Assembly (NCBI RefSeq): GCF_000002075.1
Contig: NW_004797381.1
Coordinates: 80,620 to 138,620, forward strand
Source: Aplysia californica
Lineage: Eukaryota
Direction of reading: 5' to 3'
DNA: 58,001 nt
Both the position numbers and the translations under genes were made by a program. Position 1 is the stretch's first letter, and the number at the start of each line of letters is the position of its first letter. The notes beneath the pieces are model-generated. The model was not told the DNA's origin and did not search any database. It worked only from the letters and a program-made list of their open reading frames with translations. Positions 12,101 to 47,254 of this stretch are shown piece by piece.

Positions 12101-13126
12101 CGCGTGGCGTGCTATTTCCCCAGCGGCGGAGCGCCCATCCCTCTTCAACAGCTGCCCTTGCAGTACTTCCCTCCCACCTGTCCGCCCGTCGCCCTCGCGC
12201 TTTTCCCCGCCACCCTCAACCTCAGCCTGGGCGCAGAACTTTGGCTCGAGTGCCACGGGTTGGGGGTTCCAACCCCGTCGGTGTCCTGGATCCTGCCCGG
12301 TGGATACGAGATCAACGCCACCTCCACGCCGAAATGGCCGGATGGAAGCGGCAAAACCACGCCGGCGTCGTCAGTGCGCGTTGTTGGGGAGACACGTCTA
12401 CATATCGCGGCGTTAACGCTGGCGGACAGCGGACCTTACGGCTGCCGTGCGTCCAACGCGGTAGGGGATGACTTCAGCTCTACTGTGGTTCTAGTGCTCA
12501 ATAAACCCCTGCGTTTGGTACAGGTGGAGGTGGGTGGCGATCACATCACCGTGTCGTGGCGCGGCTCGATACCGCGCCCACAGATGTCGCAATTTCAGCT
12601 AGTCTATAGGAGCCTGCGACCATCCGCTATCGAGGCGGAAAACGCGCGGCAAGATGACGCTACCTTGAAGGACGGCGGAAAGAGCGGCGGAGAAGAGGAA
12701 GACGGCTCGGCCGAGGTGTCGGGTTACCGGGTCGTCTTCCTACACGGCTCCATACACAAATGCACCATCACGGGACTTGAACCGCGAACCACTTACGAGG
12801 TATGCTTGGTGTACCGGCGCAACCAGCCCGTGCACTGCCAGAACTACACCACGACGACGGAAATTCGCCGCGTGGCCGCGCCGGCGGGCGGTATTGTGCG
12901 CGTGTCCGGCTCACAGATCGCCGTGGGCATGGCGTGCGTTTTGGGCTTCGCTCTGCTGGTGGTGAGCGTGGCTCTTGTGCGGAAGTTGCGTCACCGGAAG
13001 GACTACCGTGACCCCCTGGCGGAGGAGGAGAAGGCAGCCATACCGCTAGAAGGACTGGCCCCAAACGCCCCCAGCACACCGCTCACCTCCTCCAGAACAG
13101 CGCTGCTCACGAATTCGCAGACGTAG
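1588..13126 (+). CDS. LRRN: Leucine-rich repeat neuronal protein (LRRN1/2/3-like); 4 coding exons, 1020 aa; signal peptide-LRRNT-LRRs-LRRCT-Ig-FN3-TM
   Basis: Exons 1588-1881, 3971-4170, 9203-9338 and 10694-13126 join in frame (phases 0,2,0) with canonical junctions (CAG|gtaggt, ttgcag|G, CAG|gtacga, cccag|C, CAA|gtgagg, ttgcag|G). There is an in-frame stop at 1561 upstream of the ATG. Motifs: hydrophobic signal peptide, CPQKCRC...VNC cap, LxxLxLxxN repeats, HNPLHCDC, Ig (LWLECHGLGVPTPSVSW...DSGPYGC), FN3 (ITVSW...LEPRTTYEVC) and TM (IAVGMACVLGFALLVVSVALV). The segment DNPRLVFLHPDAFSGLPALRHLHLHNNAL...CPP...FPATLNL matches vertebrate LRRN proteins as I recall them. Confidence 0.92.
1909..2066. 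mobile_element. Small inverted-repeat element with internal TTAGGG-like repeats
   Basis: TTTCGTAACGAGCGACCAC / GTGGTCGCTCGATACGGAA flank GTTAGGG...TTTAGGGTAGGGCTAGGGTTAGGGTTA; the element lies in a (TAA)n tract. Confidence 0.55.
2082..2233. repeat. (AAT)n microsatellite
   Basis: Seen directly. (GT/CA)n tracts also occur at 1-58, 2943-3010, 8170-8362, 13167-13437, 14250-14460 and 39175-39245, and several abut assembly gaps. Confidence 0.95.
4527..4685 (-). repeat. Short interspersed repeat (family C); copies at about 39335-39500, 42750-42908 and 43952-44050
   Basis: Shared TTTTACGGCACTTGCAACACAAT...GTCATATAAGTGCC...TAGAGGTGTTACAAGAG...CCAACCACCCAC. Confidence 0.7.
5443..5962 (-). mobile_element. 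tRNA-derived SINE with Deu/Nin-like central domain, copy 1
   Basis: Minus-strand head GGGGCTCTCGTGGCCTAGAGG...GGTTCGAATCC (A/B boxes), a pyrimidine-rich spacer and a core TTCTCGGA...GCACGTTAAAGATCCC...TAAGAGTAGG...CAAAATTCAA. There are four copies in the window. Confidence 0.8.
8752..9135 (+). repeat. About 385-bp interspersed repeat (family B), copy 1
   Basis: Further copies on - at about 24178-24570, 38042-38415 and 42343-42730; same 3' tail as the Deu/Nin-like SINE. Confidence 0.8.
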
Positions 13127-29469: not shown

Positions 29470-32400
29470 TTACTTCCTTTTATCTATTGAGTTCCTTACA
29501 AACTGGATGGTTTTGTAGGGGTCAATGTTCACATTTGATGCCTGAAACAGAGAAAAAAATAAAAAGACATATTACCACTGTTACACCACAATCGAGATAG
29601 CTGTCAATTTATCTTAAATAAGTCAGTTTCTTTACACAGAATTTATCTTGTTTTCTATATGGTGTGATATAAGCAAATGTTTCAAAAAGAGAAATGGAAA
29701 TTGAATACAAAAGAGATTAAAAGCAAACAATTAAATGAACAGCTGAAAGAACAGAAGAACACAATTCATTATCAAAAGACCAAAAAAAAAAAAAAAAAGA
29801 ACCTTAAAGAAGCCGATGAGAGAGTTTATCATATAATGACAACAAGATATATAATAATAACAGGAAATAAGAACAGTTGCAAACACTAACATGTAATCAT
29901 AGGGCACCTTGATGCAGGCTGGGTCCCGTTCAAGCTTGTTTGGCAGTAGTCACCTATGTAAAAGTTTCCCCTGATTTTTCTCTCCCTTTTTTAAAATAAA
30001 CTTGTTTCATACTGAATTTAAATAATTTAGGAGTTGGGCTTTGACCCTGCTTGTCAGGACCAACCCGACCTGAAAGGGATACAACATCCTAGCGGAAAGA
30101 CCAATATATATTCGATTAAAAATTCTCCCCATGAATTGAACTTAGATCTCCTGCGTGCAACAGAGAAGTGCTTAACGACCACACCGCAGATGCCAGTAAA
30201 TTTTCTCAAGAGGAATAACTTACCAAAAAAAGCTCAAAGCTGCTTATGTCTGTCCTTATCTCTGTGACTGCTCCTCGAGTAATGACACGAGCATATGCTG
30301 GTAATCTGCCCTTAGAGGTATCCTGGGGGAAAAAAAGACCTCTTGTCAAAAACATTTCACATCAACAAAATGAGAGAGAGTGCACTAATATTGAAGCAAG
30401 TGTTGAAAACAAAGTGTAAAGTTTCCTTGAGAACTGCAAGTTTATTTTATTAATATCAAACATTTTTTTGGGGGGTCAGCAGAGCAAGTCCCATCATTTC
30501 TAGGTATTGAGTTGTTGGCAACACCAAGACTGCATAATACAATAAATAATTATAACATGCATGTTTGATTGGGTTAGTACTGACTGACTTTACATAAAAA
30601 GTTTTTGGTCCTTTTCTTGCTTTTATGAACAAGTAAATCTGTTATTTCATCATTCTCCCCGTGAAAAATACCCTAAACAAATGCGATTCATCACTACTAC
30701 TATCATATCATCGGTGCATTTGGCTGTCCACGTATGGAGCATTCAGATACTTTTGAGAAAATGTGAACAACATTTTTTGTTAGTCTAATATGAGTTTTAG
30801 CGTCTTGATTTTTTACGATTTATATTTAAGCTGTCATGAAATATTGATGCAAAGAAAACTGTAAGAGCTGGTTTTTAAGTCAAATGCCTTAAGATGGGAG
30901 TTAAATTTTTTTGTTCCATACACGGATAATGAACTGCAACAATGATATATGTGAATGGTGCTGACGAAATGAGTTACTTCTCGGATTCGAGCTCAATGGA
31001 AATCGCTACATCACGCTTATAGGTGAAGTTTTTACAATTTATAAATATGAAATAATATAAGGCATGTTATACTTAATGAATGTGACATCAATGGAAAATC
31101 TACAAATGTGACCCTAGTGTCGATTTTTTGCCAATATCTCCATTTGTGGATTGTGAGAAGTAACTCATTTTGTCAGCACGTCTCACATATAGTTATTAAA
31201 TACGGATGTCAAAATATTTTTTATCACACAGTATCACATGCAGCCACAGTACCAGTAGAGTAAGAGTAAGTGCACACAAGTGTATGGATGTTCATGCAAG
31301 GATGTAGGTCTGCATAAACATGCGAAAGCACACACAACATATGTATCTAAAATAAATCTATGGTTGCCTCATTGCCATGGACTTAATCAACTAAACTACA
31401 ATATATCAAAAGAAAACTCACAAAAGGTGGTAATCCCATGCCCATAGAGTAGCACATTTTCCCCAGGTCATCGATGAAAGCTGAAAAACAAAACACAAAG
31501 TGCTCATAAAAGAAAACTTTATTAAAAACAAGTGCTTGAAAGTGTAAAAACGAATGCAAATGTATGAGAGGCTCTGTGTAGATGCTTGCCAATATTTATG
31601 TGATGGTTGGAAAAATCAGATGGAAGATGCACTGACCAGCCTAGAAATCACGAAATAATTTTGATCAAATTTGCATACTCATTGTTTTCAATACTTTTAT
31701 TCAGCTGAAAGTTGTAATGATGATACCACAAGTCTTTGAGTACCACCCCACCCCCCCCCCAAAAAAAAAAGAAAGAAAAAACCCCAAACAAAAACCCAAC
31801 CCCTTCAAAAAAGAAACAAAAACCCAACAAAAAACAAAAAACCCCAAACATTTAAAGTGCTGACTAGCTCCGGCAGTATGCCTTCTCAAAGCAGACCTAC
31901 ATGTTTGTTAAGGCTATAACTCTTTTGGTGGTGAAGACAAGACAGCATTTGCTGAGCTGACACAGCTTGTCCCAGGGTGACAAACATAGCATACGCTGTG
32001 CTCCCACTTATCAAACTGGTAGTCTAGTTTTGAGAAACACTGATGTGGTTAAAGTGGGAAAATAACACTGAAAGTTATTCCTAGAGAGTTCCACTTTCAT
32101 TTTTCACACAGCTTGTGAACATAATCCATTTCTGAATGACCCCAGGTCTAATTTTCGACATTTAGTTGTTTCTTTTTTGTCAACAAAATGAAAACATGGT
32201 TGCACTAACAACTACTGTACATGATTCTGATACAAATATACAGCATTTTCCCTTTGAAATGTGACAAGAAGACTGAAAAGATGAAATAGACATCCACATT
32301 GTAGATGATATAAATATTGTTAACCAAGATACGCTTTGACAGACTGACTCAAACAGTGTCTCTGAAGACGAAACAGTTGACTCACCTCCGCTTGATAACA

Positions 32401-35400
32401 CAAAATTGCTATAGCCACTCATGGGAGAACCCAGTGTGAAAACAGATCTTATGTATTTCCTGTTTTGTTTTTTTCCTTCAAACATAACAATTACTACCAT
32501 GTTGACACAATTTTCCCATAACTTAAAAATATTGGCACCAAATCAGTACACGGGAACAAAAAAAAAATAATTAAAGAGTACCTCTGGGGTGCTAAAGTTG
32601 TTGATTGATAAGTGAACTCAGCTGATCGGGCACACAAATAAAGTTGAACAATATCCGTGATATTGCTTCAAAATCGAATGTTTAATGGGCTCAGTCCATG
32701 ACAAAAACGCAACAACGCTAGCTCGATTTAAATTTCTATGTGGTAATGAAGAAAGACAATAAAAACTGGTGGTCATTTTCAACACAGCGATTTACCTCTA
32801 AGCACAAAGTACAGTAACTTGTAAAAGTCTTCAGATGGCTTCTCTGCCATTATCACCACTTCGTGATCCTTCCTCGGAACCTAGGAGAAAGGAGGAAAAA
32901 ATGGATGAAAGCCATTTCAAAACTGAATTCATTTGAGAAAATTTGTACATGGTCATTGCGAAATTTCCCCTTCATCTTTCAGGGTAAATAATGTGATTTT
33001 GCACAATTTCTATAGCTTTGTACAGACTAAAGCCATATGTTTTTTAACTCTATATATATCCGAAAGAGGTAAATCCACTACATCGGGGCCCTTTTTTGGT
33101 GCTAAATCTAAAAATGACAAAAATGTCAATAAATGGGTCATTAAATCGAAACTAGCAAACCTTTTTAGATAGTTTTTCATCTTATGAATGAACTTCCTGC
33201 ATAAGAGACCTGTTTTAGGCAACTGCTGAAAGGTAACTTGATGTCGAAGTCACCGTAAAGGAATGTGCCCGAGCCGTGACGGCTCATCGGCACAGTGGTT
33301 CCGGCCGCGAGCCGCTGGGAGCGGCTTGCCACAGATAAAGAGTTAAAAAGGGTGAAAAATGTATCTATCATGTTTCTTATGGGTTCTCCTCTTTCTTTTG
33401 TGTTGCTTGAACAAAGACTTAAAATGCATCACAGATTTCTTATTGAATGTTGTAATTTGTCTTATAAAAAGGTCAGATATTTTATTGCATTCCCACATTC
33501 ACTTCATTGCACATTTTTTTGCTTCTTCTTGACCGGTCAGTTTATGCAACAGATCATCTCAAGTTCCGTTGCAAACCAATAGGCACATCCTTTCACATTC
33601 CCACATTATGAGTCTTCCAAAGCTAAGCTTACAAAGTCAAACTTGCTGCTGGGAATTTAACTTGCTAACTTTCAACAGCCAGCTCAGTGTCTTAAAAATT
33701 AGAATTGAATAGATTGAATGAAATCTACAATGTCTTCGTAAGATTATGATTAAATCAATTGAAATCAATTATGATAATAATATTAATAATGACAGGCCCT
33801 AATAATAGTAATAATAATAATAATTGCATATTTACATAGAACATAGCCACAATCAACAGCATGCTCTATATGCTTTACAACCATTATTACCCCAGCAGAC
33901 TGTAGAACACTCATAAACATTCTCAGCTTCCTGGGAAGCATACAGTGCAACCTGCCGGTTGCACACGCTCCAATACAAACTGACAAGATCTTTCACTCTC
34001 TGTCTCCCTGACCTGTTGAGTACGGAGACTAGCTTCAACTCACCAGGCTAGCAAAGGCCACAGCGTCACCGTAAGTGGCAGTCAGGTTAAGCACAGAGTA
34101 CATGGTGACCAGGTCGGAGAAATAGTTGCTGTTGAATTCATCGTTGTAGTCCTGGGCTCCGTCTCGCCACACCTCCACTTCACCTGATGGATAAAAACAT
34201 TACCAGATCCTTCGAATACAGTCTGTTGAATTTGATTTAAAAGAAGCATTTCGACAAAATAACTGTCTATCGGTGCAGGAAAGAAGCAAGACAGATAAAC
34301 AGAGACAATAGAGGGAGAGAAAAGAAGTAGGATGTACAAGTGGTGCCCTGCTTTAACAACCAACTGTCCAAGACTATCACCTGTAGAAATGATCACTTCC
34401 CACTTTGTCCCTTGTATTTTTTTCCATATGTGAGGCAGCGTGGTGGAATCAGGCTCTCGTCAATTTTTGGACATGTAGAGTTATTGGTTTCATCTTAAAG
34501 CTTGTTTACTTGTCTTTATTTTGATGAAAAAAAGATCCATTTATCTTGAATACAAGTCGAGATATTTGCGAAAGAAGGAGGAGGGGGTCACCTGTTTTCC
34601 TAGGTAAAATAAGTGAGAAAATGGCCGCCAAAGATTAGTTATTTCCGTAGCTTAAGAGTCCGTGGTAATTGAAATTTTACATTTTTTTAATCAACGTTTT
34701 TAAAGAAAATTTCACACAGAATTGGGTTCTTTATTGGGCATGAAAGGTGTTGAGCGAAAAAAAAAAATTTGATAAAAATTCACCAAGCTGCGGAAAAATG
34801 CAAGTTTCTTTACTTTGATTTGTTTTACTAGAGCCTGATTCCACCACGCTGCCTCACATATTTTAATGACACTGTCCAAGAGGACCACCTGTTCAAGAGG
34901 ACAACTTTTCTCCGCAACAACGGTGGTCATCGTCTTGGACAGGGGCAACTGTTTTGCTCCAAAATGCAGAGATAAACAATACAATTTTCAACAGCTTCCT
35001 TAACATGACAAACAAACCTGTCAACCCATGGATGGGCTAAAATAGGAGATTTCCCCAGAATCCTCCCTAAAAATCAGGGTTTGGGAAAAAAGATTGTAGT
35101 CTCCAGAACCCAAGAAGATTCAGATTACATTACAAATCAGTTGTGGCAAATAAACAATTTGCACCAATAAAAATGTGTGTTGTTGCGACATAAGTCATGC
35201 AAATATTACAAATAAACTCAAAATAAACCCGTGGATGTTCACGTCATTTATGATAAGTTGCGAAAAACCAATAGAAACGGAATTCCAGAAAAAAAAAAGA
35301 TTTTATGCAAATTTGATAATCAGGGTTCTTCTACAATAAAAATTTTCTTTTTAAAATTGAAGGGCTCCAATTTTATCACAGTGCTTGGCAACACTGTTGT

Positions 35401-38400
35401 AAAACATAGATATTTCCAAAATGAAAGCATACTTCTTTTATTCACCTTCTTCTCTTACTCCCCCCCCCCTCCCCCAATTTAAATTCACCTTTTTCTTTAT
35501 TTCTTTTAAATTTTAAGTGTAAATTCATAACTTCATGTAAGTCAACACAGCTAAAAGAAAGGAGCTACATTAATGGGGGGAAAAAAAGATATGGGACTTG
35601 CCACAGACAAAAACCATCTGTAGAAAACAAGTGGGACTTATTCAGTTTCTAAATGCTGCTTAAAAGATTTTATCTAATTATTTTATTTGAAAGAAAACTA
35701 TTTTTAGAAAAGAACTGATGGATTTCTCTGTTTTCTTTTCTTCGAAGGCAAATAATAATTGTTATTCTAAACAAAGCTCTTCAGAAAAAGCCTGATAACT
35801 CCCCCTGGTGAGAGTCTTTTGTCTAAATTGTATACACCTCACAACTAGAAACAAACAAACAGATGTGATCGTGGAGATAAGACAATGTTATGATGCAACC
35901 TCTTTGGGAAAAAACAGATGCAATATAATATGCTTCTCTCAAAGAATGCAAGATGACGTGATTCATTTAGCAAACAGTTGAACTTTCAAGCTGTGTGGTA
36001 CAGGCAGGAAGTCTAAAGCCAAGATATTAACAATTTTGTTACATCAGGGATGCCATTGGGATCTTGTAAAAATAACTGAAAATTTACGAAGTTGCATTTG
36101 CAAATAAAAAGACAAGCTATAGACACAACTAATATGAGGTCAAACAGAAAACAAATGCTGAGAACAATAACTGCTCTTCTAACCTACTTTCTGTGAATGT
36201 AATGGAAAATAGGGGAAAAATGGCATCCCTGTTTCCAGAGCTGTTAAAGTAGCCTACAGTACTTTTTAAAAAGTACTTAAGTACAAATTTAAGTACAATC
36301 TAAAAAATGTACTTAAGTACAGTAAAAGTACTTTCCTGTAAAATGTACTTGAGTACAAGTACTTTTTAAAAAAGTACTTATGAGTACATTTTGGGTACTT
36401 TCTGCTAATAAGCTAAGACACTTCAGTGCTAATGCAAAACATTATATTGAATAACATATCCAGTATATTTGGCAAATTAGACCATTTATTACTAAAAATG
36501 TAAACAGTATACAAAGCATTTGAATATACAATGTACGCACTGAACGTAGGTGGAAATGGTCTGTAAAATTGAAAAAAAAAACCCCCGAACAAACAGTCGC
36601 AACTAGTGGGTAAGTGATATTATGAATAGAACTTGTTTGAGCTAGATAATGTGATCAAATGTAAGTCTGTCCAAGAGGTCGGAAAGTTCTACAAAGAAAA
36701 TGTAGATACAAAGTTGCTCTTAAGAAAACATAAAATGGATGAAAATGGCCAGCACAGAAATGGAAAAGGGCATTGAATTCTTCATTAACAAATCCTCAAG
36801 GAATCAAAGTAGCCTTAAGCAAAAACAGCCCCAAAATTTTTTTACAAGAAATTTAGGTAGCCTCAAACATTGTTACATATACATTGAGAACTCAGTTTCA
36901 GTTTCAATTGATTAGTGGTAAGACAGATTTTGGTCACACTGTGTAGTCCACAGTGCCCACGGCAAACCAAAATACATGTAGTTTCCTAGAATCTAGTAAG
37001 TGTAGAGTAACCAAAGATTCTCTACTACAAGAGCCTCTGCCTGAGATCCCAGTGCTTGGAAGCAAGGAAAATACGGGAATTTAGCCGACGAAGCCAAGGA
37101 AGAATGTACAGTGACCCAAGAACTGGCATGATCCCTGGGTGGGTTTATGACATATGGCGAGCAAAGAGTGGTCAACCTTGATGACCTATCACAGTGGCAT
37201 GAGGCATGCCATGTACACTCATTAGCCTATCGTGAGTCTTGAGATCTGTATCTACGTTTATCCCAGTTGTCCCTCCCCTTTACCTGTCCAACAATTTTAG
37301 CTTTCCATCTCTGATTGAGTACCCCCGCCTTTGTCGTTATGCACCATTGCGTTGTGACCACACCAATTAAAATTCAGGCCGTCTCGCAAATTCGGGAATA
37401 AAGAAAAACTGCTTTCAATGGTTAGGGAAGAGTTTACAGTTCGATGTGATCCCGCCTGGAGCGAACTTGTAGGCCATACCCACCCAGTGAGTGATCATTG
37501 CCTTTCAGATAATGTAGGCCATGGAGTGATGTAAGTTTAGGTGGTGAGCTCAGATGCGAGTGCGATGTTTCGGGAAAAGAAACGCACCGGTCAGTTCACA
37601 CCTCAGTGTGATCCCGTCAGCGGCAAACACTGTGCCGTTTCATGGAGTTTTACAACGCTTATGATCACATTCACAAGAGTGGCTGATCTTTGACACGACG
37701 GGCTGTTCTTTGATCTCAACTTGGTTGATCGGCTGTTACCGCACTGGGGTTTATACTGTAAATTATGATCAGAAATGCCGGCACTTACCCTTTCATTAAG
37801 CTTCAAAAGTACTCAAAATATACTTAACAAATACTCAAAAGTACTTTTATAAAAAGTATCGGAGTACAGTAAAATTACTAGTTTCAAAAATGTACCGGAG
37901 TACAGTAAAAGTACCCAAAATTGTAATGTAAGTACAAGTACCGGAGTACCTGTACTCCGTTACTACCAGCTCTGCCTGTTTCATGACATTCTTTCTTCCA
38001 ACAACAATTCCTTGTAATGCAGCAGCTTTTTTTTTGTTTTAGAAAGGTTTTACGGTGCTTGCAACTGCATAAGGTCATATGAGCACAAAGGGGTGGATGT
38101 TAACAGTGAAGTCCAAATGGGGAATCAGGTTAACTCTGCACACCTCTCTAGCCTCAACAGCACAAAGACTGCTTCGATTATCAAGGCACTCTGGAAATAG
38201 CAGTTTACAAGAGAGCGACAAACATACGAAAGAAAAAGAGTAAAAATGATGATAGTAAGGATGAGGAAAGAAAAAGCAGCAGTTCCCCCTCTGTTGTTCG
38301 GGCACAGTATGAGCATGACAGTGATAAATTAGCCCATTTACAATTCTACTGTGCATAAGAACATGTTTATATTCTCCCCTTTGGGAATGACATCAGTCAG

Positions 38401-39197
38401 TAGCACTGCCCTGTGGAGGAGGCAGCTTCCTAAATGAGGGCACAATATAAAGTCATGTGACTAACCGTGGTATCTGTGGGAGTCAAGCATCACTTGCATG
38501 TGAGGGTGGACCTGGCTGGCTCCACATTTGGGCAGGACGTCCCAGATGAGGGCGGGATAGAGCGCGTTAGGGTAGTGCTTGTTGGCCTTGGTCAGCCTGT
38601 GGGGACACTTAATCTTCAGTGGGTCTCTTTATTACATTTAAGTTGAGATGTTTCACGTTTTGTTTGCTGCTTTTGTTTTTTGGGTTTTTTCTGGGGGGGG
38701 GGGGGGGGGGGGGGCAGCATTTGATAGAAGTAAAAAGACTAGTTTTTTCTTACCTTCCTAGATCTGAAAAAAATTAATATTGGACTTGAGGGAAAAGCTG
38801 AGTCATAATATACACATATACAACAGTAATATATATACACAAAGACAACAGAATAATCGTTACATTTCATTGGAACCAGATGTAGACAAAAGAAATACAA
38901 TAGTGTCCACCAATCAACATTACTCAGGATAACAACTGAGATTTATGCTATTGCCAGGAGAGGAAAAGTCACTATTTGCACCTTCAGGGATAAAACGAGC
39001 ACTTGTCCTGGAGCAGCACGATAAAATGTTTGTAGTAATGAAGAAAAAAAAAAAGAAACATTTTATAAACTAATAGAAACAAATAGTAGCAAGGGTCATC
39101 CATGGCAGCAAAAGAGGTGAAGTGGGAGATCACTGTACAACATCCATGGCCTGCTCCAGGAATCAAACACTCTGTGTATGTGAGTGAGTGCGAGTGA

Positions 39198-39237
<40 letters not shown>

Positions 39238-42200
39238 TTGTGTGTACATGTGTGAGCATGCTCTTATAAGAGCGCATGTAAAGGGGTGTACATGAGTGTG
39301 TGTGAGTCTCTAAGTATTAGTTTTTTTTAGCACAAGTTTTAAAGCACTTGCAATACAATTATGTAATATAAGCGCTGGAGATTTGAGGTGTTACTAGAGA
39401 GTAACTTACGAAGAAAAGAAGAAGGAAAGATATGGACGATAAATGTTAGATAGGTAAGAAGGCGCAAGCTACAAAAGAGGATCCACCAACCACCCACGTC
39501 TCTAAGAAGGTCAGTATGGTGCATTTCTCATGTGTGTACTTATGCGCGCGACTGTATGTACACATGCAGGCACAAGCAAATAAGTCCTCACACATGGGTG
39601 TACACGCTAGTCCTTGTATTTATTAAGTGATTCTGTAAGCATGCCTATTTCCACAAATGGCTTATGGTAGAGTGGTTAGCATACCCACCATGTCAAAGTG
39701 AGCCCCATCACATCCAAGAATTTCTCCATGTTCCAGTCCAGTGGATTATGTTGTTTCAATGCCACCAGAGCATGGAGTGGATTCATCTTGAAGATATTAG
39801 AGGCGGAGAACGCGTACCTCGATTCGACACGGCCGAATGTGTGCTCAGCAGTGAACCTGAACAAGATAAACTATTACTTCAGTGGGGTGTGATAATAATA
39901 ATAATAACAAAAACAACAACTATAATAATATAACAATTGCATGGCACATATCCCCGCTCAACTGCAAACTCTATGCGTTTTCCACTACATTATTACCCCA
40001 GCAGACCCTAGAACACCCCAAAACATTCTTGGCTTCCCAGGACGCATACAGTGCAAGCAGTTGATTAAGCGCTCAAACACTAACACACTGACAAGATCTT
40101 TTGCTGTCTACAGCCAGGTACCCGTTCTCACCTCAGTGAAGTGAGTACATTTCTTGCTTAGTGCCTTTCCAAGAATACAATATTGGGCCCCTGAGGGGAT
40201 TTGAACCTACGATCTAACGGTTACGAGTCCCAGAGCCTAACCACTAGGTCACTGACACCACATGTGTACACATATTACACGTCTCTGGATTTTTGCATGA
40301 TGGCTGTGATAGTTCTGGCCAGTATCCCCCCATCTTGATCTCGACTATAGTCAAACCATCTGTACCGGCCACCTGTATAAGACAGTAACTTGTACAAACA
40401 GCCACTTCATGTTTCCCCCCAGTGGGTTTTGTTTACATAATGACATCGTGTTAGGCACCCACCTGTCTTAGACAGTCACTTTTCTCCCCGATAATGAGTC
40501 ACCATCTTAGACAGTCACTTTTCTCCCCGATAATGAGTCACCATCTTAGACAATTTTGACTGTATGTATAACACTATTTGCCTTCCTGCAATTACCCATG
40601 TTTCTTTCTCTGGGTTAAAGTTGAAACCGATTCAAGCAGAAATAATATATTCTGAAATAATTTTGTGTGGAAAACTAGGGAGTGTATCATTGCCTCGATG
40701 GCAATGAAAACATCTGATGACCATGTCTATCATTTGTGGCATATCCTTTTCTCAATGAGACTTCACTTCGACCACCACAGCTGATCATTGGTCCGTCATA
40801 ATTAATGTGGAGAAGTAGCTCCAGAGGCCATCTTGTCGAGGCAGGAGTTTACTCTTGTTGATATCCGCTTGTTGAACATCAGACTTCATGGCCAAACCCC
40901 CAATCAAGATGACCTATCTAGTTGATTTAAAAGTAATTTCCATTTTATACTTCAAAAGGATAAAGGACTGCAATATAAAACTCCATATCAACAAAATCAT
41001 TGGGATCCAGATAATGTTACATTGATACAAGCTATACATTCATCCTATCCCCCCACCCCCCCAAAAAAATAAACCCCAAACAAACAGAAAAACATGCTTG
41101 CTTCATTTTTAATCAGTTAAAAAAACATCCCCTTCACACATTTTTATAGATTTAGGCCTACAGGTAATCTTTTATAGTTGAGAAAATATCAAGCAAAACA
41201 AAAGAAATACTTCAACTCACTCTTTAAAGTTACAAAAGTCACAGGATCCAGATGTTTCAGCCAAAATGTCATCCACACTGAAACAAAACAGAATGAATAA
41301 AATATGGTCATCAAAATGTAAGAAACTGAAAGACAGACATAAACAGACAGCCTTTCAAAATGCTGAGTTATCATAAAACCAAGATAAAAATGTTAAAAAA
41401 CTTCTCATAATTAAATCAGAACTTGAGAAAAAGATGTTGAGATGTCTGCAGAAATTCATAATAAGGCCAGAGAATAAGAAAATGTGACTAATGTCGCACT
41501 AGACATCTTCATTAAAAGTAAAAGATTTTCTCTTGTATTCTTGTTATAGAATTCAATGTCAGTCAATTGTGGACTCTCCAAACCAGTGTGCAACTGACTT
41601 TAAAGTGGATGGTATATTGTCTCATGAGACAGAACTAGCCTTGATTTTTCAAGCAGCTGTACGTTGTATCGTACAATACTAATTAATTATATGCACATTT
41701 CAGAGTTTTCAAGTACAGGGTAGAAATTTATGCAGAATTGTTTGGGCAGCTGACCTGGGCAGGCCTGATTTCCTTTGACAATCAACAGATCACATATCTC
41801 AAAAAAACATACAATGCACACAAGGGATCCCTGAAGGTATTGACTTAATCAAGCAGATCACATGCCAGACCTTATCCGTCCTGTGACAATGAGCATGACA
41901 AAATAAAGGCAAAATTAACACTTTGCCCACTGAACATGCCAACACAATCTCAGAATTAAAACATGTACTTTGGTATAAGAAGAAAGCCCTTAATCTCTAG
42001 GCTAAAGAGCCAATAAACAGTTAAGTTTAACTGAAGAAATCTTATAAATTTTATTGCCACACTTTTCATAGAAAGATCACAGAAAGAAAAACTCACTATT
42101 TCTTCTCCGAGATTTCAGGAGGAATTACGGGCCTCTTGTCACGGATAGGGTTGAAGATAGTGTGCTCATGAGTGTAGTGATTGACGACATGAATCACATC

Positions 42201-45200
42201 CTGTGCACATAAAATGAAACTTTTCTCAGAACTGAGACAATTCATAAGTTTGTTCTGAAAGGGGTTAATCATCAGAAGCAGATTTAAACAGAAATCTATA
42301 TTCCAGAATGACAATTCTTAAACACCGATTTTTCACCAATTAGTAGAGGTTTTATGGCGCTCGCAACAGCATAAGGTCATATGAGCGCCAAGGGGTGGAT
42401 GTCAACAGAGAAGTCCAAACAGGGAATCAGGCTAACCCTGCTCACCTCTCTAGCCTCAACAGCACAAAGTCTGCTTCAACTATCAGGGCACCCCGGAAAC
42501 AGCAGTTCACAAGAGAGCAACAAACATGATACAAAAGAAGTAGAGGAAAAATGACGATAGTAAGGATGAGGAAAGAAAAAAGCAGTTTCCCCTATGTTGT
42601 TCCGGTACAGTATGAGCATGACATTGATAAATCAGCCCATTTACAATTCTATTGTGCACAAGAACATGTTAATATCACCTCATTGGGAATGGCCTAAAGA
42701 CACTTCAGTGAGTGACACTGCCCTGGGGTACGGAAGGGTGTGTGTGTAAGACTTTTACGGCACTTGCAACACAATAAGGTCGTGCTGTAGATTAGAGCCC
42801 TTACACGCGAGAAAAAAATACAAAAAAGAAAGAGGAGAGATGAGGATGATAGATGTTTGATAGACAAGAAGGAGTAAACCACGCCAGTGCACCTGCCAAC
42901 CACCCACAAATTGTTGAATGAAGCAGAATTGTAGTCAGTAGCAAACCATGGGGACGGTGGCCAAATTTTGTCACAGGATACAAGTTAAGACAAAAACAAA
43001 ACTAAACAAAAGTTAAAGATGTACACGGCAAAAAAGCCCTCCCCCCGAAAAAAAAAAGACAATTTTTGTTATGATCTTATGATCNNNNNNNNNNNNNNNN
43101 NNNNNNNNNNNNNNNNNNNNNNNNNNNNNNNNNNNNNNNNNNNNNNNNNNNNNNNNNNNNNNNNNNNNNNNNNNNNNNNNNNNNGGGGGGGGGGTTGGGA
43201 GTTGTTAGGAAAGAAAAGATATTTTTGTGATCATGTGGAACACAAAGCGTAACCCATGCACGGCTGATAGGACAAGGACAAAAATAAACGAAAAAAGGTA
43301 CTTGAAGGGATCTCTTGCCTAACAAAGACAATGACAATCTTTCTTCATCTCGCAGGGAGAAATTTGTCTTGGTCGTTTACACTGGCAGTGGGTGTTACAA
43401 AGACCACGAGCACCCATGCATGCACACAACAAGACAGGTAATTAAATACATGAATTACGTGCTGAAACACCTCTGCTCTGTAAACATTTTCTCTCTCTCT
43501 CTCCGTGGAGGTGTTAGCTGGAGGTTGGGAGATAGTTCGGGGAGGGGGTGCGTGACAATAAGTGTAGGTTGGGTGAAAAGTGTTGGTGAAAAGAATGAAA
43601 GATGGATGACTACACTCGGGACAGAAAGATATAAACACATTACAATGAGTGGTCCTTTTATCTCTCACTTACATAAAAATATTTACCAACCAATAGAAAC
43701 AAAGGGAAAAGGAAAGAAAAAACAAGATTTTATAGATTGCCAAAAGCCTAGACTTTGTGTACAAACACAAGAAGTATTGTGTTGACAAGTCCTCTCCTGA
43801 TAAGAAATAAACTACCAAATGTTTGAACAAAGAATGAAGCTCTCCTAAAGAGTTTGAAATGAGGCCAAGAGATAACCACAATGCGTGCACATAGCAGAAT
43901 ATCCCAAATACAATACATTAGTGACACAAACAGAATCTTTTAGTTTTATTAGGAGTTTTCGGCACTTGCAACACAATAGCGTCATATAAGTGCCAAAGAC
44001 TAGAGGTGTTACAAGAGAGTAACAAACACAAAAAAGAAGGAGGGGAGACCCAAAGCTAAAAGTATAGTAAAAGAAGCCACAGCTTAAAGTGAGTCTACAA
44101 AATAACATGTACATGACAATGAGCAAAAAGGAAAAAAGGTTTAAACTAAAAAAAAAAAGTAGATAGAGCAGACTGCACGAAAGTATGCATTGACCATCCA
44201 TTCACAGGTTACGAAAAGGAGAAAAAATCAACTGCAAACAACAATATAACAGCATAAACAGGTGGCAACGATTTTCATTAACTGCTGCAATACAACAGGA
44301 ATAAATGCACTGTTACATCAATACCCAAGAAGTATATCCTGTGATCACAATGAGCAAAAAAAATATGAACTAATTACACAAAGAAATCTGACATACACAT
44401 ATATTAAGCAAAAGATTTTTTATATATATAAACAATAACCCTGGAAAATCCATCATACACACAAACAAACCAACTTACCTGGTTGTACACTTGCTGGAAA
44501 AGTGCTTCATCGTTTCCCAGCCACTTTCTCACTTTACGCTGGAACGGTTTTGGAATCTTCAATGAAGCATGTTCTCCCTCCAGTGCAAACACAGCACTGA
44601 ATTTTTGGAACAGTTCTCTGTAACATTACAAGTACAAATTGTGGTATGAATAGCTCCTTCGGGTCAAAGACAAACCGCAATGACACAATCCCAGTCAAAA
44701 TTCTCTAAGACGGCCGCCCAACGTCGAAGAGAAAAGAGGTGGTTTCAAATAGGTGCATGATGTCTCGAACAGTGTCATTGTGGAAAAAAAAAAGCAAAGG
44801 GAGGGGAGTCAAGAAGTTGTTGTCTAAGTGGTTGTCTTGGACAGGTGGCTGTTTGAGCAGGTTTGATTGTCCTTGAAGTGTCTGTGAGTCGGCATGAAAT
44901 GCCTGAGAATGAAATGCCTGTGAGAAATATTCAAGCATCCCTAAGTCATCTTGGGTACATGATGTCAATCACTTTAAAGGAAATATGAGTCAGTTTCAAG
45001 CACCACTGAATCATCATTAAGAGCCTGCAAATCACCTTTACAAGGCGAGGAGTCATTTTCTGGAGTATTTTAAAATCATCTTAAATCTTTTGGACATAAC
45101 TCTGTTATAATGAAAAGATAAACCCAGCAAGCATGTCTCTCAGCACACAACCCAGTCTAGGAATATTTCTGCAACCTACAGAGCTGCGTAAGTTAAAAGA

Positions 45201-47046
45201 AACATTGAAGTCACATTCTTAGTCATTCTAAAAAGAGCAAATTTTCAGTTTTCCCTTACCTGCACAGGAGATCTCTAGTGTCTGCCCACTCCTTTCGAAG
45301 GGTTACCAGACCTGTGATGCTGAAGTCAGTCTGCTTGACACAGCGCTTGCTGAAATATTCCTGACACAATGAAGTAGGAGGGTTAATATTTGTGTCTGTT
45401 TATTAACTGAGATTTACACAAATATGTCTAGTCGTCAATGGGGGATCTGAAATCTGACTAATAAAACCATTACNNNNNNNNNNNNNNNNNNNNNNNNNNN
45501 NNNNNNNNNNNNNNNNNNNNNNNNNNNNNNNNNNNNNNNNNNNNNNNNNNNNNNNNNNNNNNNNNNNNNNNNNCCTCAACTAAATACATATTATATCTTG
45601 GTAAAATAATCAGGAGCATGAGACAAAAAAAAAGGGTTGTAAAATATTAAAACTTACAAGACAATTTTGGTACAAAAAGAAGTAGGAGAAGACAAAAGGG
45701 AGCAGTGTTTTTTCTAGAACCTGACCAACAGAACAGGAATAGAAGAATAGAGCAGTAGGCTAAGTACAACACACAGAAATACCTGAAAGGGGAGGGCCAT
45801 CACAGTGATTATGGGTGAAAGAACAGGGAAATTTTATTTTAACAGAGAAACAAATTTTAAGAGTATTTAACATCGTTGAACTTGCTCTAATGGCCATTTG
45901 TATAGGACAATCGAATGGAAAAATGACCACTACCCACTTCTCCACTTGCGCCTTTTTTATATTATAATGACATTGTCCAGGACATCCTCCTGTCTAAGGC
46001 AACCTCTCTTCTCCTCAGCAATGGATGGATGTCTTGGACAGTTTCAACTGTAATAATTTTTTTCAGATTAATGTGAACTATTGATAAACGCCACATCAGC
46101 ACATCTGATCTTTCTTTAAAATAAGCAGAGATGTATTCTATTTTTAAAAAAATATATACACATATCTTGACAGTGCTACTTTCAGCCAGCTCCCACACAT
46201 CACTTCTATCTGACAATTCAAGGATGTATTCTACCCATGAGCCTATAACTTACAACAAGTAGAAGAATTCTCATCTCCGGGGTGGATTTTTGTTTCATGA
46301 AGGGAATTCAAACTGACAAACGAATGTGAATGATTCATGCAAAATGTGACTCATTTCATTTTATGAAAACTATCAATATAATATTCCTTGGACGTTCTTA
46401 ACCCTTTCCCCAGTGATTGGGTGTAATCCACTGGAGTTTAATGTTTGCGAATCTATTAAAACTTCACTCAATCATCAACTTAACCCCTCTAAACATCATA
46501 TTAACGCAAAATGTTTGAATTGTCAAAATGATGCAAGCACTTGTTGATCAAAATGTTTTTAAACGTATCCCGAGTGACTGGGTCTTTTACACATGTACAC
46601 GTTTTACAGAGCAAGCAGACAGCAGGAGATTTAAAAAATACTCTGTGAAGACTTAATTATCCATTCATTGCTTTAGATTTAAAAGAAAATAGATAATTCA
46701 TGAGGCTTTGAAAATCACTTCCACGGTCAATGAGTTTAAAGAGTATACTGACAGAGAGGAAAAAATACACACACAAAAAAGGAAAAGGATAAACAGCACT
46801 CACTCTGTCCATTCCTGGCTTTGGGTCAAATGTCTGCCAGACAGAGTATCCTTGTTTGTGACGAGACTTCTGTAGTAGTCTACTGCCATCAGAAACATTT
46901 CGTCTTAAACCACCACTACTAATACTTCCAAAGAAATATATAATGCTCACAACAATGAGTATTCCAAAAACAATCACAACATGTTTTTTCCACTTGAGGC
47001 CCATAGTTACCAAAGGAGGTTTGTTCCTTTCAAAGTTCAATTTCAT
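29470..47046 (-). CDS. Uncharacterised type II membrane protein with GalT-type HIT-superfamily nucleotidyltransferase/phosphorylase domain; 12 coding exons, 465 aa (451 aa from the second Met at 47004)
   Basis: Exons (minus strand): 47046-46804, 45360-45260, 44617-44479, 42200-42097, 41277-41221, 39856-39689, 38596-38466, 34183-34044, 32880-32796, 31480-31422, 30322-30224, 29541-29470. All junctions are GT-AG and the 1398 nt form one open frame ending ...DPYKTIQFVRNSIDKRK*. A basic N-tail and TM (KWKKHVVIVFGILIVVSIIYFFG) precede CDFC, SNIFKMNPLHAL and WDVLPKCGASQVHPHMQ. Confidence 0.88.
30946..31191. mobile_element. Probable MITE / inverted repeat
   Basis: TGCTGACGAAATGAGTTACTTCTC (30959-30982) versus GAGAAGTAACTCATTTTGTCAGCA (31155-31178). 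Confidence 0.5.
34431..34856. mobile_element. MITE family copy 2
   Basis: Same TIRs and interior as 14722-15153. Confidence 0.85.
36236..37974. mobile_element. hAT-type non-autonomous element
   Basis: Termini CAGAGCTG...CAGCTCTG; perfect 8-bp TSD CCTGTTTC (36228-36235 and 37975-37982); dense subterminal AAGTAC/GAGTAC repeats at both ends. Confidence 0.85.
38042..38415 (-). repeat. Family B repeat, copy 3
   Basis: Colinear with 42343-42730. Confidence 0.8.
39930..40260 (-). mobile_element. CORE-like tRNA SINE; related head at about 4200-4415, partial body at about 33820-34000
   Basis: Minus-strand head GACCTAGTGGTTAGGCTCTGGGACTCG...GGTTCAAATCC, a CORE-like TTGGAAAGGCACT segment and an (ATT)n tail. 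Confidence 0.6.
40348..40562. mobile_element. Tc1/pogo-type MITE with an internal 39-bp tandem duplication
   Basis: TA|TAGTCAAACC...TTTTGACTG|TA. GACAGTCACTTTTCTCCCCGATAATGAGTCACCATCTTA occurs twice in tandem. Confidence 0.55.
42343..42730 (-). repeat. Family B repeat, copy 4
   Basis: Colinear with 24178-24570. Confidence 0.8.
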
Positions 47047-47254
47047 TTTCGCATCAAATATGTGTCAAAATGTGCTGTAATAACTTTCTCTTGTCAAAAC
47101 CTATGAAGAAAAATATAAAATGGAAAAGTCAAAGTAATTCAATTTCCTGGAAAAGAAAAAATAGTCTCAAAATTAGTTGAAATCAAGCTAAGATATCATG
47201 AGCCATGCAATAATAATATTGTCGCATATCCGCAGCAATGCTATTAATATAAAA

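What the first reader, a model, noticed from the sequence alone, without database searches (positions are those of the whole stretch)
29470..47046. Membrane-anchored, probably lumenal GalT-type HIT enzyme: candidate undescribed secretory-pathway nucleotide-sugar enzyme
Seen: a 12-exon ORF with glycosyltransferase-like topology (short basic tail, single TM, stem), followed by CDFC and GASQVHPHMQ. Established: H-x-H-x-Q defines the GalT/Apa1/VTC2 branch of the HIT superfamily. Its second His forms a covalent NMP intermediate, and CxxC binds zinc in E. coli GalT. The characterised members I know are soluble cytosolic enzymes. The rest of the protein does not resemble canonical animal GALT. Inference: a Golgi, ER or cell-surface nucleotidyltransferase, phosphorylase or hydrolase acting on NDP-sugars or dinucleoside polyphosphates. 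From memory, similar motifs (TFGRV, SNxxK, RG...D...EL...DP) occur in archaeal and bacterial hypothetical proteins; this is unverified.
Basis: partly seen in the sequence, partly recalled or inferred. Interest (0 to 1): 0.8.

Follow-up and report, generated by a model that had tools for sequence, protein, structure and literature searches.

The report
Membrane-anchored GalT-like HIT enzyme gene
A 12-exon sea-hare gene encodes a membrane-anchored relative of galactose-1-phosphate uridylyltransferase; it belongs to an unnamed, untested enzyme family whose soluble bacterial cousins sit next to glycogen (ADP-glucose) genes, so it is probably a nucleotide-sugar enzyme working in an unusual place.

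Summary
A minus-strand gene of 12 GT-AG exons (47046 to 29470) translates exactly to the 465-aa database protein 'uncharacterized protein LOC101853305 [Aplysia californica]'. Both assembly gaps lie in introns. Spliced RNA contigs from three studies join the TM exon to exons 2-5.

The protein has a basic tail, one TM helix (residues 19-43), and then a confidently modelled domain (pLDDT 91). This domain is a complete two-lobed GalT fold: Z 23.4 to Arabidopsis ADP-glucose phosphorylase, and Z 22 to E. coli and human GALT. RDKRP, CDFC, H251, H301-P-H303-M-Q305 are invariant or nearly so in 65 relatives.

No Pfam or NCBIfam model covers the family. TM-anchored members occur in molluscs, echinoderms, cnidarians, priapulids, crustaceans, choanoflagellates and Capsaspora. 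Soluble members occur in green algae, Chloroflexota, Rubrobacteraceae and archaea. In the prokaryotes, 46 of 80 loci have glgC and/or glgA close by, mostly directly upstream.

Best reading: a type II membrane enzyme with a probably lumenal catalytic domain. It would form a covalent NMP-His303 intermediate and act as an NDP-hexose phosphorylase or hexose-1-phosphate nucleotidyltransferase. Location and substrate are inferred, not shown. I rate it a new variant of a known kind.

The parts
46804..47046 (-). Exon 1 (residues 1-81): ATG, basic tail, TM helix, start of stem. The transcribed exon runs on to 47102 as 5'UTR.
   Evidence: Exact match to P0089. The donor is GTGAGT and there is an in-frame stop upstream. 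RNA contigs cover 46803-47102 and continue into a further upstream exon.
46918..46992 (-). TM helix / signal anchor (residues 19-43)
   Evidence: AF2 helix H19-43. Kyte-Doolittle 19-mer score 2.75. N-flank charge +4 against C-flank +2.
45260..45360 (-). Exon 2 (residues 82-114 plus 2 nt). Carries the Cys pair C88 (45342-45340) and C114 (45264-45262).
   Evidence: The Cys pair co-occurs in 46 of 65 relatives and both are absent in 15.
44479..44617 (-). Exon 3 (through residue 161)
   Evidence: Splice junctions seen in RNA contigs of X1, X12 and X4.
42097..42200 (-). Exon 4 (residues 162-195 plus 2 nt). Holds FNPIRDKRP; RDKRP lies at 42143-42129.
   Evidence: R181 is invariant; N178 and P185 are nearly so. 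It aligns to 'SPARAKRP' of 1Z84.
41221..41277 (-). Exon 5. Holds CDFC (41243-41232), the candidate Zn ligands C208 and C211.
   Evidence: C208/C211 are 100% conserved in TM-anchored members.
39689..39856 (-). Exon 6. Holds TAEHTFGRVES, SASNIFK, and H251 (39750-39748), a candidate Zn ligand.
   Evidence: T217, N235 and H251 are invariant.
38466..38596 (-). Exon 7. Holds GASQVHPHMQ (38523-38494): H301 at 38508-38506, nucleophile H303 at 38502-38500, Q305 at 38496-38494.
   Evidence: S298, H301 and H303 are invariant. The motif aligns to GASMSHSHSQ (H184/H186/Q188) of 1Z84.
34044..34183 (-). Exon 8 (start of the second HIT-like lobe)
32796..32880 (-). Exon 9 (VPRKDHEVV...)
31422..31480 (-). Exon 10 (FIDDLGKMCYSMGMGLPPF)
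30224..30322 (-). Exon 11 (PAYARVITRG...RTDISSFELF). R425, G426 and D434 are nearly invariant.
29470..29541 (-). Exon 12 (NVNIDPYK... plus the stop codon at 29472-29470)
45474..45573 (.). Assembly gap inside intron 1. It does not affect the coding sequence.
   Evidence: A DNA contig of run X10 bridges it, and RNA contigs splice across the intron.
43085..43184 (.). Assembly gap inside intron 3. It does not affect the coding sequence.
   Evidence: RNA contigs join 44478 to 42199 directly. Homologues lack no residues at this junction.

Best explanation
The gene encodes a type II single-pass membrane protein. It has a short basic cytosolic tail and a signal-anchor helix at residues 19-43. After a short flexible linker (about residues 44-65), the rest (to residue 465) is a compact catalytic domain that most likely faces the lumen of the ER or Golgi, or the cell exterior.

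That domain is a two-lobed GalT-type member of the histidine-triad superfamily. C208, C211, H251 and H301 would hold a structural zinc, as in class I GalT and Arabidopsis ADP-glucose phosphorylase. H303 would attack the alpha-phosphate of a nucleoside-diphosphate sugar. This releases hexose-1-phosphate and leaves a covalent NMP-His303 intermediate, which Q305 would stabilise. The NMP is then passed either to inorganic phosphate (phosphorylase, giving NDP) or to another sugar-1-phosphate (nucleotidyltransferase).

The soluble prokaryotic relatives are encoded next to glgC and glgA, so their substrate pair is probably ADP-glucose and glucose-1-phosphate. For the animal membrane form, a UDP- or GDP-hexose is the likelier nucleotide sugar.

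Shown here: the gene model, its transcription with the TM exon, the fold, and conservation of the catalytic residues. Inferred: zinc binding, membrane orientation, compartment, substrate, and the direction of the reaction.
For: - Gene model: identical to P0089.
- Transcripts: spliced RNA contigs in runs X1, X12 and X4 (three studies) join exons 1 to 5.
- Structure: AF2 model has pLDDT 91.1 and pTM 0.84, with a TM helix at 19-43.
- Foldseek: 2H39/1Z84 ADP-glucose phosphorylase at E 4e-12 and TM 0.70, followed by human and E. coli GalT, Apa2 and DUF4931.
- VIA-align: Z 23.4 (273 residues, 3.3 A) to 2H39, 22.4 to 1HXQ, 22.0 to 5IN3. Single-domain HIT proteins score only Z 10-13.6.
- Sequence profile of 65 relatives against PDB: best hit 1Z84, E 7.8e-4, with RxxRP and the His motif aligned.
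- Conservation: R181, T217, N235, H251, S298, H301 and H303 are invariant. C208, D209, F210, C211, R425, G426 and D434 are nearly invariant.
- Topology: almost all TM-anchored members have a more basic N-flank than C-flank. A Cys pair (C88/C114) occurs together in 46 of the 65 aligned relatives, and both are missing in 15, all of them forms without a TM anchor.
- Gene neighbourhood: 46 of 80 prokaryotic loci have a glgC-like and/or glgA-like gene within 6 kb, mostly directly upstream on the same strand. The examples tested pass NCBIfam cut-offs for GlgC (L036, L022) and for ADP-glucose-type GlgA (L046, L024). A spirochaete-like contig places the gene beside a sugar ABC transporter, LacI and TreT.
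- Eukaryotic soluble members come from green algae, which use ADP-glucose (established knowledge).
Against: - No experiment bears on location, metal binding or activity.
- Orientation rests only on the positive-inside rule, a conserved Cys pair and two sequons (N50, N347). I could not measure the Cys-Cys distance because the model coordinates are not exposed. The sequon density is only slightly above that of the soluble forms (0.57 against 0.39 per 100 aa).
- The glgC/glgA linkage concerns relatives with only about 30% identity. Many of them (Chloroflexota) have xPFC in place of CxxC. Animals are not known to make ADP-glucose, so the substrate cannot simply be transferred.
- The 80 loci were recovered with one peptide pattern and are phylogenetically clustered.
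- The fold cannot tell a phosphorylase from a transferase or a hydrolase.
- In two thirds of holozoan members the fifth motif position is H rather than Q.
Confidence: 0.55

Rival explanations
1. The fold and chemistry are the same, but the catalytic domain faces the cytosol. The N-terminal helix would merely tether the enzyme to an organelle surface (ER, Golgi or outer mitochondrial membrane), where it acts on cytosolic NDP-sugars.
For: All characterised GalT-branch enzymes are cytosolic (established knowledge). Zinc-cysteine sites are commonest in reducing compartments. Orientation was not tested. The C-flank of the helix also carries basic residues (RR at 48-49).
Against: In almost all TM-anchored members the N-flank is more basic than the C-flank. 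A Cys pair occurs only in the anchored forms. The hydrophobic stretch of 20+ residues and the short basic tail match the classical type II signal anchor.
Confidence: 0.2
2. It is a lumenal or cell-surface enzyme that acts on dinucleoside polyphosphates (Ap4A phosphorylase, as in Apa2) or on other NMP-X compounds rather than on NDP-sugars.
For: Apa2 structures are significant fold hits (E 5e-6 to 3e-5). Sub-threshold Ap4A_phos_N Pfam hits occur in 4 of 65 members. Extracellular Ap4A and UDP-sugars are signalling molecules (established knowledge).
Against: Apa2 aligns far worse (TM 0.27-0.43) than ADP-glucose phosphorylase or GalT (TM 0.60-0.70; Z 22-23). The prokaryotic neighbours are NDP-glucose enzymes.
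Confidence: 0.12
3. It is simply a divergent Leloir-pathway GALT (UDP-glucose:galactose-1-phosphate uridylyltransferase), as the automatic names of some homologues imply.
For: UniRef and the ESM Atlas label some homologues and clusters 'Galactose-1-phosphate uridylyltransferase'. Z is 22 to GalT structures.
Against: There is no hit to PF01087/PF02744 or TIGR00209 at E<=1 for P0089. Identity to GalT is 11-16%. The Leloir pathway is cytosolic and has no use for a membrane anchor. The prokaryotic relatives sit with glgC/glgA, not with gal operons.
Confidence: 0.08
4. It is a non-catalytic relic or a mis-assembled gene model.
For: There are two assembly gaps inside the locus. No functional data exist.
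Against: Both gaps are intronic. The translation matches P0089 exactly. RNA contigs are spliced as modelled. All catalytic residues are invariant across holozoans, algae, bacteria and archaea.
Confidence: 0.02

Closest known systems
Arabidopsis At5g18200 ADP-glucose phosphorylase (PDB 2H39, 1Z84, 1ZWJ)
   Same: It is the best structural match (Foldseek E 4e-12, TM 0.70; Z 23.4 over 273 residues) and the best sequence-profile match (E 7.8e-4). RxxRP, CxxC and the GAS..HxHxQ motif align. The prokaryotic relatives of the window protein are linked to ADP-glucose genes.
   Different: Identity is only 15-18%. At5g18200 is soluble with no TM anchor. It lacks the additional folded N-terminal segment (about residues 66-160, with the C88/C114 pair). 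No shared Pfam model detects the window protein.
Class I galactose-1-phosphate uridylyltransferase (E. coli GalT 1HXP/1HXQ/1GUP; human GALT 5IN3/6GQD)
   Same: It has the same two-lobed double-HIT fold (Z 21-22.4, 274-292 residues aligned). The Zn-ligand pattern (CxxC plus 2 His), the nucleophilic second His and the Gln are the same (features per bioRxiv 10.64898/2026.09.13.751320).
   Different: Identity is 11-16%. P0089 has no hit to PF01087, PF02744 or TIGR00209. GalT is cytosolic. The His ligands of the E. coli GalT iron site have no evident counterpart here; this is from my reading of the sequence and was not tested structurally.
Yeast Apa2 Ap4A phosphorylase (4I5T/V/W) and the DUF4921/DUF4931 proteins (4QVU)
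   Same: They belong to the same GalT branch of the HIT superfamily and are significant fold hits. Weak Pfam hits to Ap4A_phos_N and DUF4921 occur in a few family members.
   Different: The superposition is much poorer (Apa2 TM 0.27-0.43; DUF4931 Z 14.8). They are soluble.
Type II Golgi nucleotide-sugar-converting enzymes (e.g. UDP-glucuronate decarboxylase UXS)
   Same: The predicted architecture is the same: short tail, signal anchor, then a lumenal enzyme acting on nucleotide sugars. This is an analogy from established knowledge; see also PMC10631120.
   Different: The fold is unrelated (short-chain dehydrogenase) and so is the chemistry. The resemblance is in topology only.

Membership tests
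GalT branch of the HIT superfamily | Modified histidine-triad motif HxHxQ followed by hydrophobic residues, with the second His as nucleophile | tested here: met
   H301-P-H303-M-Q305-V-M at 38508-38488. H301 and H303 are invariant in 65 relatives. The fifth position is H or Q across the family. The motif definition is taken from the preprint read.
GalT branch of the HIT superfamily | Two HIT-like alpha/beta lobes in one chain (double HIT fold) | tested here: met
   AF2 model with pLDDT 91. Z 21-23.4 with 261-292 residues aligned, spanning model residues about 92-465, to GalT and ADP-glucose phosphorylase. Single-lobe HIT proteins match only residues about 200-320 at Z 10-13.6.
GalT branch of the HIT superfamily | Structural zinc site (Cys-x-x-Cys plus two His) of class I GalT and ADP-glucose phosphorylase | tested here: inconclusive
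   The candidate ligands C208, C211, H251 and H301 are present and conserved in all TM-anchored members. Metal binding cannot be tested here. Most Chloroflexota relatives lack the first Cys.
GalT branch of the HIT superfamily | Covalent NMP-histidine intermediate and ping-pong kinetics | not testable with these tools
   This needs enzymology with an H303 mutant.
Curated GalT families (Pfam PF01087/PF02744; NCBIfam TIGR00209) | Score at or above the curated cut-off | tested here: not met
   P0089 has no Pfam family at E<=1, and none of the 65 members reaches any gathering score. No NCBIfam GalT hit for P0089. One soluble relative scores 14 bits against a cut-off of 102.
ADP-glucose phosphorylase (At5g18200 type) | Phosphorolysis of ADP-glucose to glucose-1-phosphate plus ADP | not testable with these tools
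   There is only indirect support. It is the best fold and profile match, and the prokaryotic relatives have glgC/glgA next door.
Type II (signal-anchor) secretory-pathway membrane enzymes | A single N-terminal TM helix with a more positive cytosolic N-flank, present in the mature transcript | tested here: met
   Helix at 19-43. Flank charges +4 against +2, with the same bias in almost all anchored homologues. The TM exon is spliced to exons 2-5 in RNA contigs.
Type II (signal-anchor) secretory-pathway membrane enzymes | Catalytic domain in the lumen (glycosylated, disulfide-bonded, protease-protected) | not testable with these tools
   There are only hints: the C88/C114 pair restricted to anchored forms and the sequons N50 and N347.

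The most novel reading that the evidence does not exclude
This would be the first histidine-triad enzyme that works inside the secretory pathway. It would be a lumenal NDP-sugar phosphorylase or nucleotidyltransferase that interconverts nucleotide sugars, NDP and sugar-1-phosphates within the Golgi or ER of non-vertebrate animals and their unicellular relatives. That would add an unrecognised step to lumenal nucleotide-sugar homeostasis. Its soluble prokaryotic and algal cousins would be an unrecognised, ATP-independent route between glucose-1-phosphate and ADP-glucose in glycogen and starch metabolism.
Probability: 0.35. Interest if true: 0.8.

Novelty: new variant of a known kind. Interest (0 to 1): 0.6.

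Why it matters
Every characterised member of the GalT branch (GALT, ADP-glucose phosphorylase, Ap4A phosphorylases, GDP-L-galactose and GDP-glucose phosphorylases) is a soluble cytosolic enzyme.

A conserved, transcribed, catalytically intact member with a signal anchor implies covalent nucleotidyl-transfer chemistry on nucleotide sugars in the lumen or at the cell surface. It is spread from choanoflagellates and Capsaspora to molluscs, echinoderms and cnidarians, and it did not appear in vertebrates in my searches. Current models place only transporters, glycosyltransferases, a few sugar-converting enzymes and NDPases in that compartment.

The family has no Pfam or NCBIfam model. A curated model would therefore rename hundreds of 'hypothetical' proteins.

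The glgC-glgA-X gene order in Chloroflexota gives an immediately testable biochemical hypothesis for the soluble forms. That result would in turn guide assays of the animal enzyme.

Tried and rejected
- Single exons against Pfam, PDB by phmmer and the word-indexed protein search were all blank. Exon pieces are too short.
- The first Atlas call failed because the machine was busy.
- The HMMER search of 1.84 billion representatives with the 55-aa TFGRV exon opened the family: 78 hits.
- I did not build or submit a joined spliced sequence. The exon-by-exon walk showed the model equals the database protein P0089, and I used P0089 by id thereafter.
The narrower A3 worked.
- A quick ML tree grouped the 19 sequences I had classed as soluble (algal, metagenomic and prokaryotic) into one moderately supported cluster (SH-aLRT 83), nested with one TM-anchored row in a well-supported one (96). 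It is unrooted, has long branches and contains only 5 prokaryotic rows. I draw no origin or transfer claim from it.
- My BLAST cluster labelled 'glgA' also pulled in other GT4/GT5 enzymes. The Rubrobacteraceae neighbour is a sucrose-phosphate-synthase-like GT fused to a PfkB kinase, and the archaeal 'glgC' neighbours are generic sugar-1-P nucleotidyltransferases below the cut-offs. The strict glgC/glgA claim therefore holds for Chloroflexota and Thermomicrobiota. Elsewhere the neighbours are NDP-sugar enzymes in general.
- Four literature searches found no description of a membrane-anchored HIT/GalT enzyme. The library does not cover subscription journals.
- I rejected the pseudoenzyme, mis-assembly and canonical GALT readings (see the rival explanations).

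Full report

Yes. All three motifs lie on the minus strand: CDFC at 41243-41232, TFGRV at 39840-39826, and GASQVHPHMQ ending at 38494.

Single exons gave nothing in Pfam, PDB or the word-indexed protein search. I then searched 1.84 billion representative proteins with the 55-residue TFGRV exon, given by reference. This returned 78 relatives, several of them full length at about 450-500 aa. A word search seeded with the closest full-length hit then returned P0089, 'uncharacterized protein LOC101853305 [Aplysia californica]', 465 aa.

An exhaustive exon-by-exon walk asked which chain of GT-AG exons reproduces P0089 residue by residue. It has exactly one solution. The 12 exons are 47046-46804, 45360-45260, 44617-44479, 42200-42097, 41277-41221, 39856-39689, 38596-38466, 34183-34044, 32880-32796, 31480-31422, 30322-30224 and 29541-29470. 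They total 1398 nt.

Once identity was shown exon by exon, I used the database protein P0089 by its id.

An in-frame stop lies six codons upstream of the ATG within the same exon. The N-terminus therefore cannot be longer than modelled.

**2. The assembly gaps**

Gap 45474-45573 lies in intron 1 and gap 43085-43184 lies in intron 3. Homologues lose no residues at either junction.

Run X1 holds one 761-nt spliced contig that carries, in order, 41219-41277, 42097-42199, 44478-44617, 45260-45359 and 46803-47102. Runs X12 and X4, from other studies, show the same junctions. Transcripts therefore splice across both gap-bearing introns exactly as modelled.

Run X10 behaves as DNA, and one of its contigs bridges the first gap. 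I did not fill either gap.

The TM exon is present in transcripts and is joined to the catalytic exons. The RNA contig continues about 31 nt beyond 47102, so there is a further non-coding exon upstream.

**3. What the protein is**

AlphaFold2 was run on a 65-sequence alignment (A1) with P0089 as the first row. It gave mean pLDDT 91.1 and pTM 0.84. The model has a helix at 19-43, a low-confidence linker at about 44-65, and a compact domain from there to residue 465.

Foldseek against the PDB ranks these first:
- Arabidopsis ADP-glucose phosphorylase (2H39/1Z84): E 4e-12, target TM 0.70.
- Human GALT, E. coli GalT and an archaeal uridylyltransferase.
- Then Apa2, DUF4931 and the small HIT proteins.

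VIA-align gives Z 23.4 (273 residues, 3.3 A) to 2H39, 22.4 to 1HXQ and 22.0 to 5IN3. Single-lobe HIT proteins match only residues about 200-320 at Z 10-13.6. The whole two-lobed GalT architecture is therefore present, not just the motif.

A sequence profile of the family finds 1Z84 as its best PDB hit (E 7.8e-4). In that alignment FNPxRxKRP lies over 'FSPARAKRP' and GASQvHpHlQ lies over 'GASMSHSHSQ', which holds H184, H186 and Q188.

Across the 65 relatives:
- Invariant: R181, T217, N235, H251, S298, H301 and H303.
- Nearly invariant: C208, D209, F210, C211, R224, K238, Q299, R425, G426 and D434.

By position, C208, C211, H251 and H301 correspond to the structural zinc ligands of class I GalT, and H303 to the nucleophile. 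The family features are as summarised in bioRxiv 10.64898/2026.09.13.751320.

That is true of the sequence (11-18% identity) but not of the fold.

**4. Is it a named family?**

No. P0089 hits no Pfam model at E<=1, and none of the 65 members reaches any gathering score. The only recurrent sub-threshold hits are to HIT-clan families: Ap4A_phos_N in 4 members and DUF4921 in 3. NCBIfam is blank too.

Every source name is 'uncharacterized', 'hypothetical' or 'unnamed', with three exceptions. One amphipod entry is called 'HIT-like domain'. Two UniRef entries are auto-named 'Galactose-1-phosphate uridylyltransferase'. The ESM Atlas cluster names are the same.

Four full-text searches found no paper on a membrane-anchored HIT or GalT enzyme.

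**5. Distribution**

TM-anchored forms of about 450-500 aa occur in:
- gastropods, bivalves and a chiton
- Haliotis and Lottia
- echinoderms (Amphiura, Strongylocentrotus)
- Priapulus
- an amphipod
- an acanthocephalan
- Exaiptasia
- rotifers (Atlas only)
- Salpingoeca
- Capsaspora

Aplysia has a second copy on contig C588, which probably corresponds to LOC101858440. No vertebrate appeared, but my searches were not exhaustive.

Soluble forms of about 350-385 aa occur in green algae (Botryococcus, a pedinophyte) and on a picoeukaryote-like contig. One pattern scan also found them in 265 prokaryotic genomes. These include Chloroflexota, Thermomicrobiota, Rubrobacteraceae, Thermodesulfobacteriota, Methanobacterium, Bathyarchaeia, Archaeoglobales and Woese-/Nanoarchaeia.

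**6. Clues to function**

I called ORFs around the 80 retrieved prokaryotic loci and clustered the neighbours. The two commonest neighbour families lie mostly directly upstream on the same strand. One is glycogen-synthase-like (31 loci) and the other is a sugar-1-phosphate nucleotidyltransferase (24 loci). Together, 46 of the 80 loci have one or both.

- Representative Chloroflexota neighbours pass NCBIfam equivalog or subfamily cut-offs for glucose-1-phosphate adenylyltransferase GlgC (L036, L022) and for ADP-glucose-type glycogen synthase GlgA (L046; Herpetosiphon L024).
- In Rubrobacteraceae the neighbour is a sucrose-phosphate-synthase-like GT fused to a PfkB kinase.
- In archaea the neighbours are generic sugar-1-P nucleotidyltransferases and GT4 enzymes.
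- A spirochaete-like contig has a sugar ABC transporter, LacI and TreT alongside.

The common denominator is enzymes that make or use NDP-glucose, and specifically ADP-glucose in Chloroflexota. That agrees with the best structural match being an ADP-glucose phosphorylase. It also agrees with the eukaryotic soluble members coming from ADP-glucose-using green algae.

Caveats:
- The loci were retrieved with one peptide pattern and are phylogenetically clustered.
- They share only about 30% identity with the animal protein.
- Most Chloroflexota members have xPFC instead of CxxC.

**7. Topology**

In almost all anchored members the N-flank of the helix is more basic than the C-flank; P0089 has +4 against +2. 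The hydrophobic stretch is too long for a cleaved signal peptide. This is the classical type II signal-anchor pattern, with the N-terminus in the cytosol and the C-terminus in the lumen.

The cysteines C88 and C114 occur together in 46 of the 65 aligned sequences. Both are absent in 15 sequences, all of them lacking a TM anchor, and only one is present in 4. This is what a lumenal disulfide added together with the anchor would look like. I could not measure their distance in the model.

P0089 has two sequons, N50 and N347. Sequon density is only modestly higher than in the soluble forms. Orientation is therefore inferred; I put it at about 0.7.

**8. Mechanism I commit to**

The protein is a type II membrane enzyme with a probably lumenal catalytic domain.

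- C208, C211, H251 and H301 hold a structural zinc.
- H303 attacks the alpha-phosphate of an NDP-hexose.
- Hexose-1-phosphate leaves, and an NMP-His303 intermediate forms with help from Q305.
- The NMP is transferred to phosphate (phosphorylase) or to another sugar-1-phosphate (transferase).

For the soluble prokaryotic and algal forms, the likely substrate pair is ADP-glucose and glucose-1-phosphate. For the animal form it is more likely a UDP- or GDP-hexose. Overall confidence is 0.55.

Rivals:
- Cytosol-facing tethered enzyme: 0.2.
- Ap4A-type substrate: 0.12.
- Ordinary Leloir-pathway GALT: 0.08.
- Relic or artefact: 0.02.

**9. Novelty and verdict**

The gene is already annotated, though as uncharacterised, and automatic pipelines have noticed its GalT likeness. 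The fold assignment itself is therefore not new.

Three things appear undescribed:
- a distinct, model-less family within the GalT branch
- its holozoan members carry a conserved signal anchor and an extra N-terminal segment with a Cys pair
- its prokaryotic members sit in glgC/glgA neighbourhoods

I rate it a new variant of a known kind, with interest 0.6.

Noticed in passing
G000:C588:42313-50140 (minus strand); loci L011 and others: There is a second, paralogous copy of the gene in the same genome. It probably corresponds to P0104 (LOC101858440), which is 46-48% identical to P0089 and also has an N-terminal TM helix. Several other gastropods carry 2-3 paralogues.
   Followed up: partly
window 42195-42990, 43986-44184 and 38078-38392: These are interspersed-repeat copies inside introns 3 and 7. 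Word depth is enormous in every run, and many spurious 'joints' fall between 42390 and 43996-44005. The ORF translations at 42507-42659 and 38075-38356 are near-duplicates.
   Followed up: no
window 45474-45573: A DNA contig of run X10 bridges this gap with about 50 letters between the flanks, so the nominal 100-N gap is probably over-estimated. I did not read out or fill in the letters.
   Followed up: no
window 47102 and upstream: The RNA contig that covers exon 1 continues about 31 nt past 47102, where an AG acceptor sits (cttcatag|G at about 47100). The gene therefore has at least one further non-coding 5' exon that I did not locate.
   Followed up: no
loci L020-L092 (Chloroflexota, Thermomicrobiota): Most glgC/glgA-linked bacterial homologues have D/G-P-F-C instead of C-x-F-C, so they lack the first candidate zinc ligand. 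Methanobacterium and Bathyarchaeia keep CxFC. The metal site may differ between clades.
   Followed up: partly
loci L024, L025, L032, L037, L046, L047, L049, L053, L061, L069, L073, L078, L089: In these loci glgA lies directly upstream of the HIT gene with no glgC within 6 kb. This would fit the HIT enzyme supplying ADP-glucose from ADP plus glucose-1-phosphate. That idea is speculative.
   Followed up: no
P0001 (Haliotis rubra XP_046582314.1, 565 aa): The model contains the TAEH...HPHVH segment twice in tandem (residues about 200-310 and 314-425). This is either a tandem exon duplication or a gene-model artefact.
   Followed up: no
window 1588-13126 (+): A large LRR, Ig and FN3 single-pass membrane protein ORF (823 aa at 10655-13126, plus upstream LRR exons) lies on the other strand.
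   Followed up: no
window about 39100-39300: A (CA)n/(TG)n microsatellite lies in intron 6. It produces the spurious HTHTHT 'HxHxQ' matches in the motif scan.
   Followed up: no
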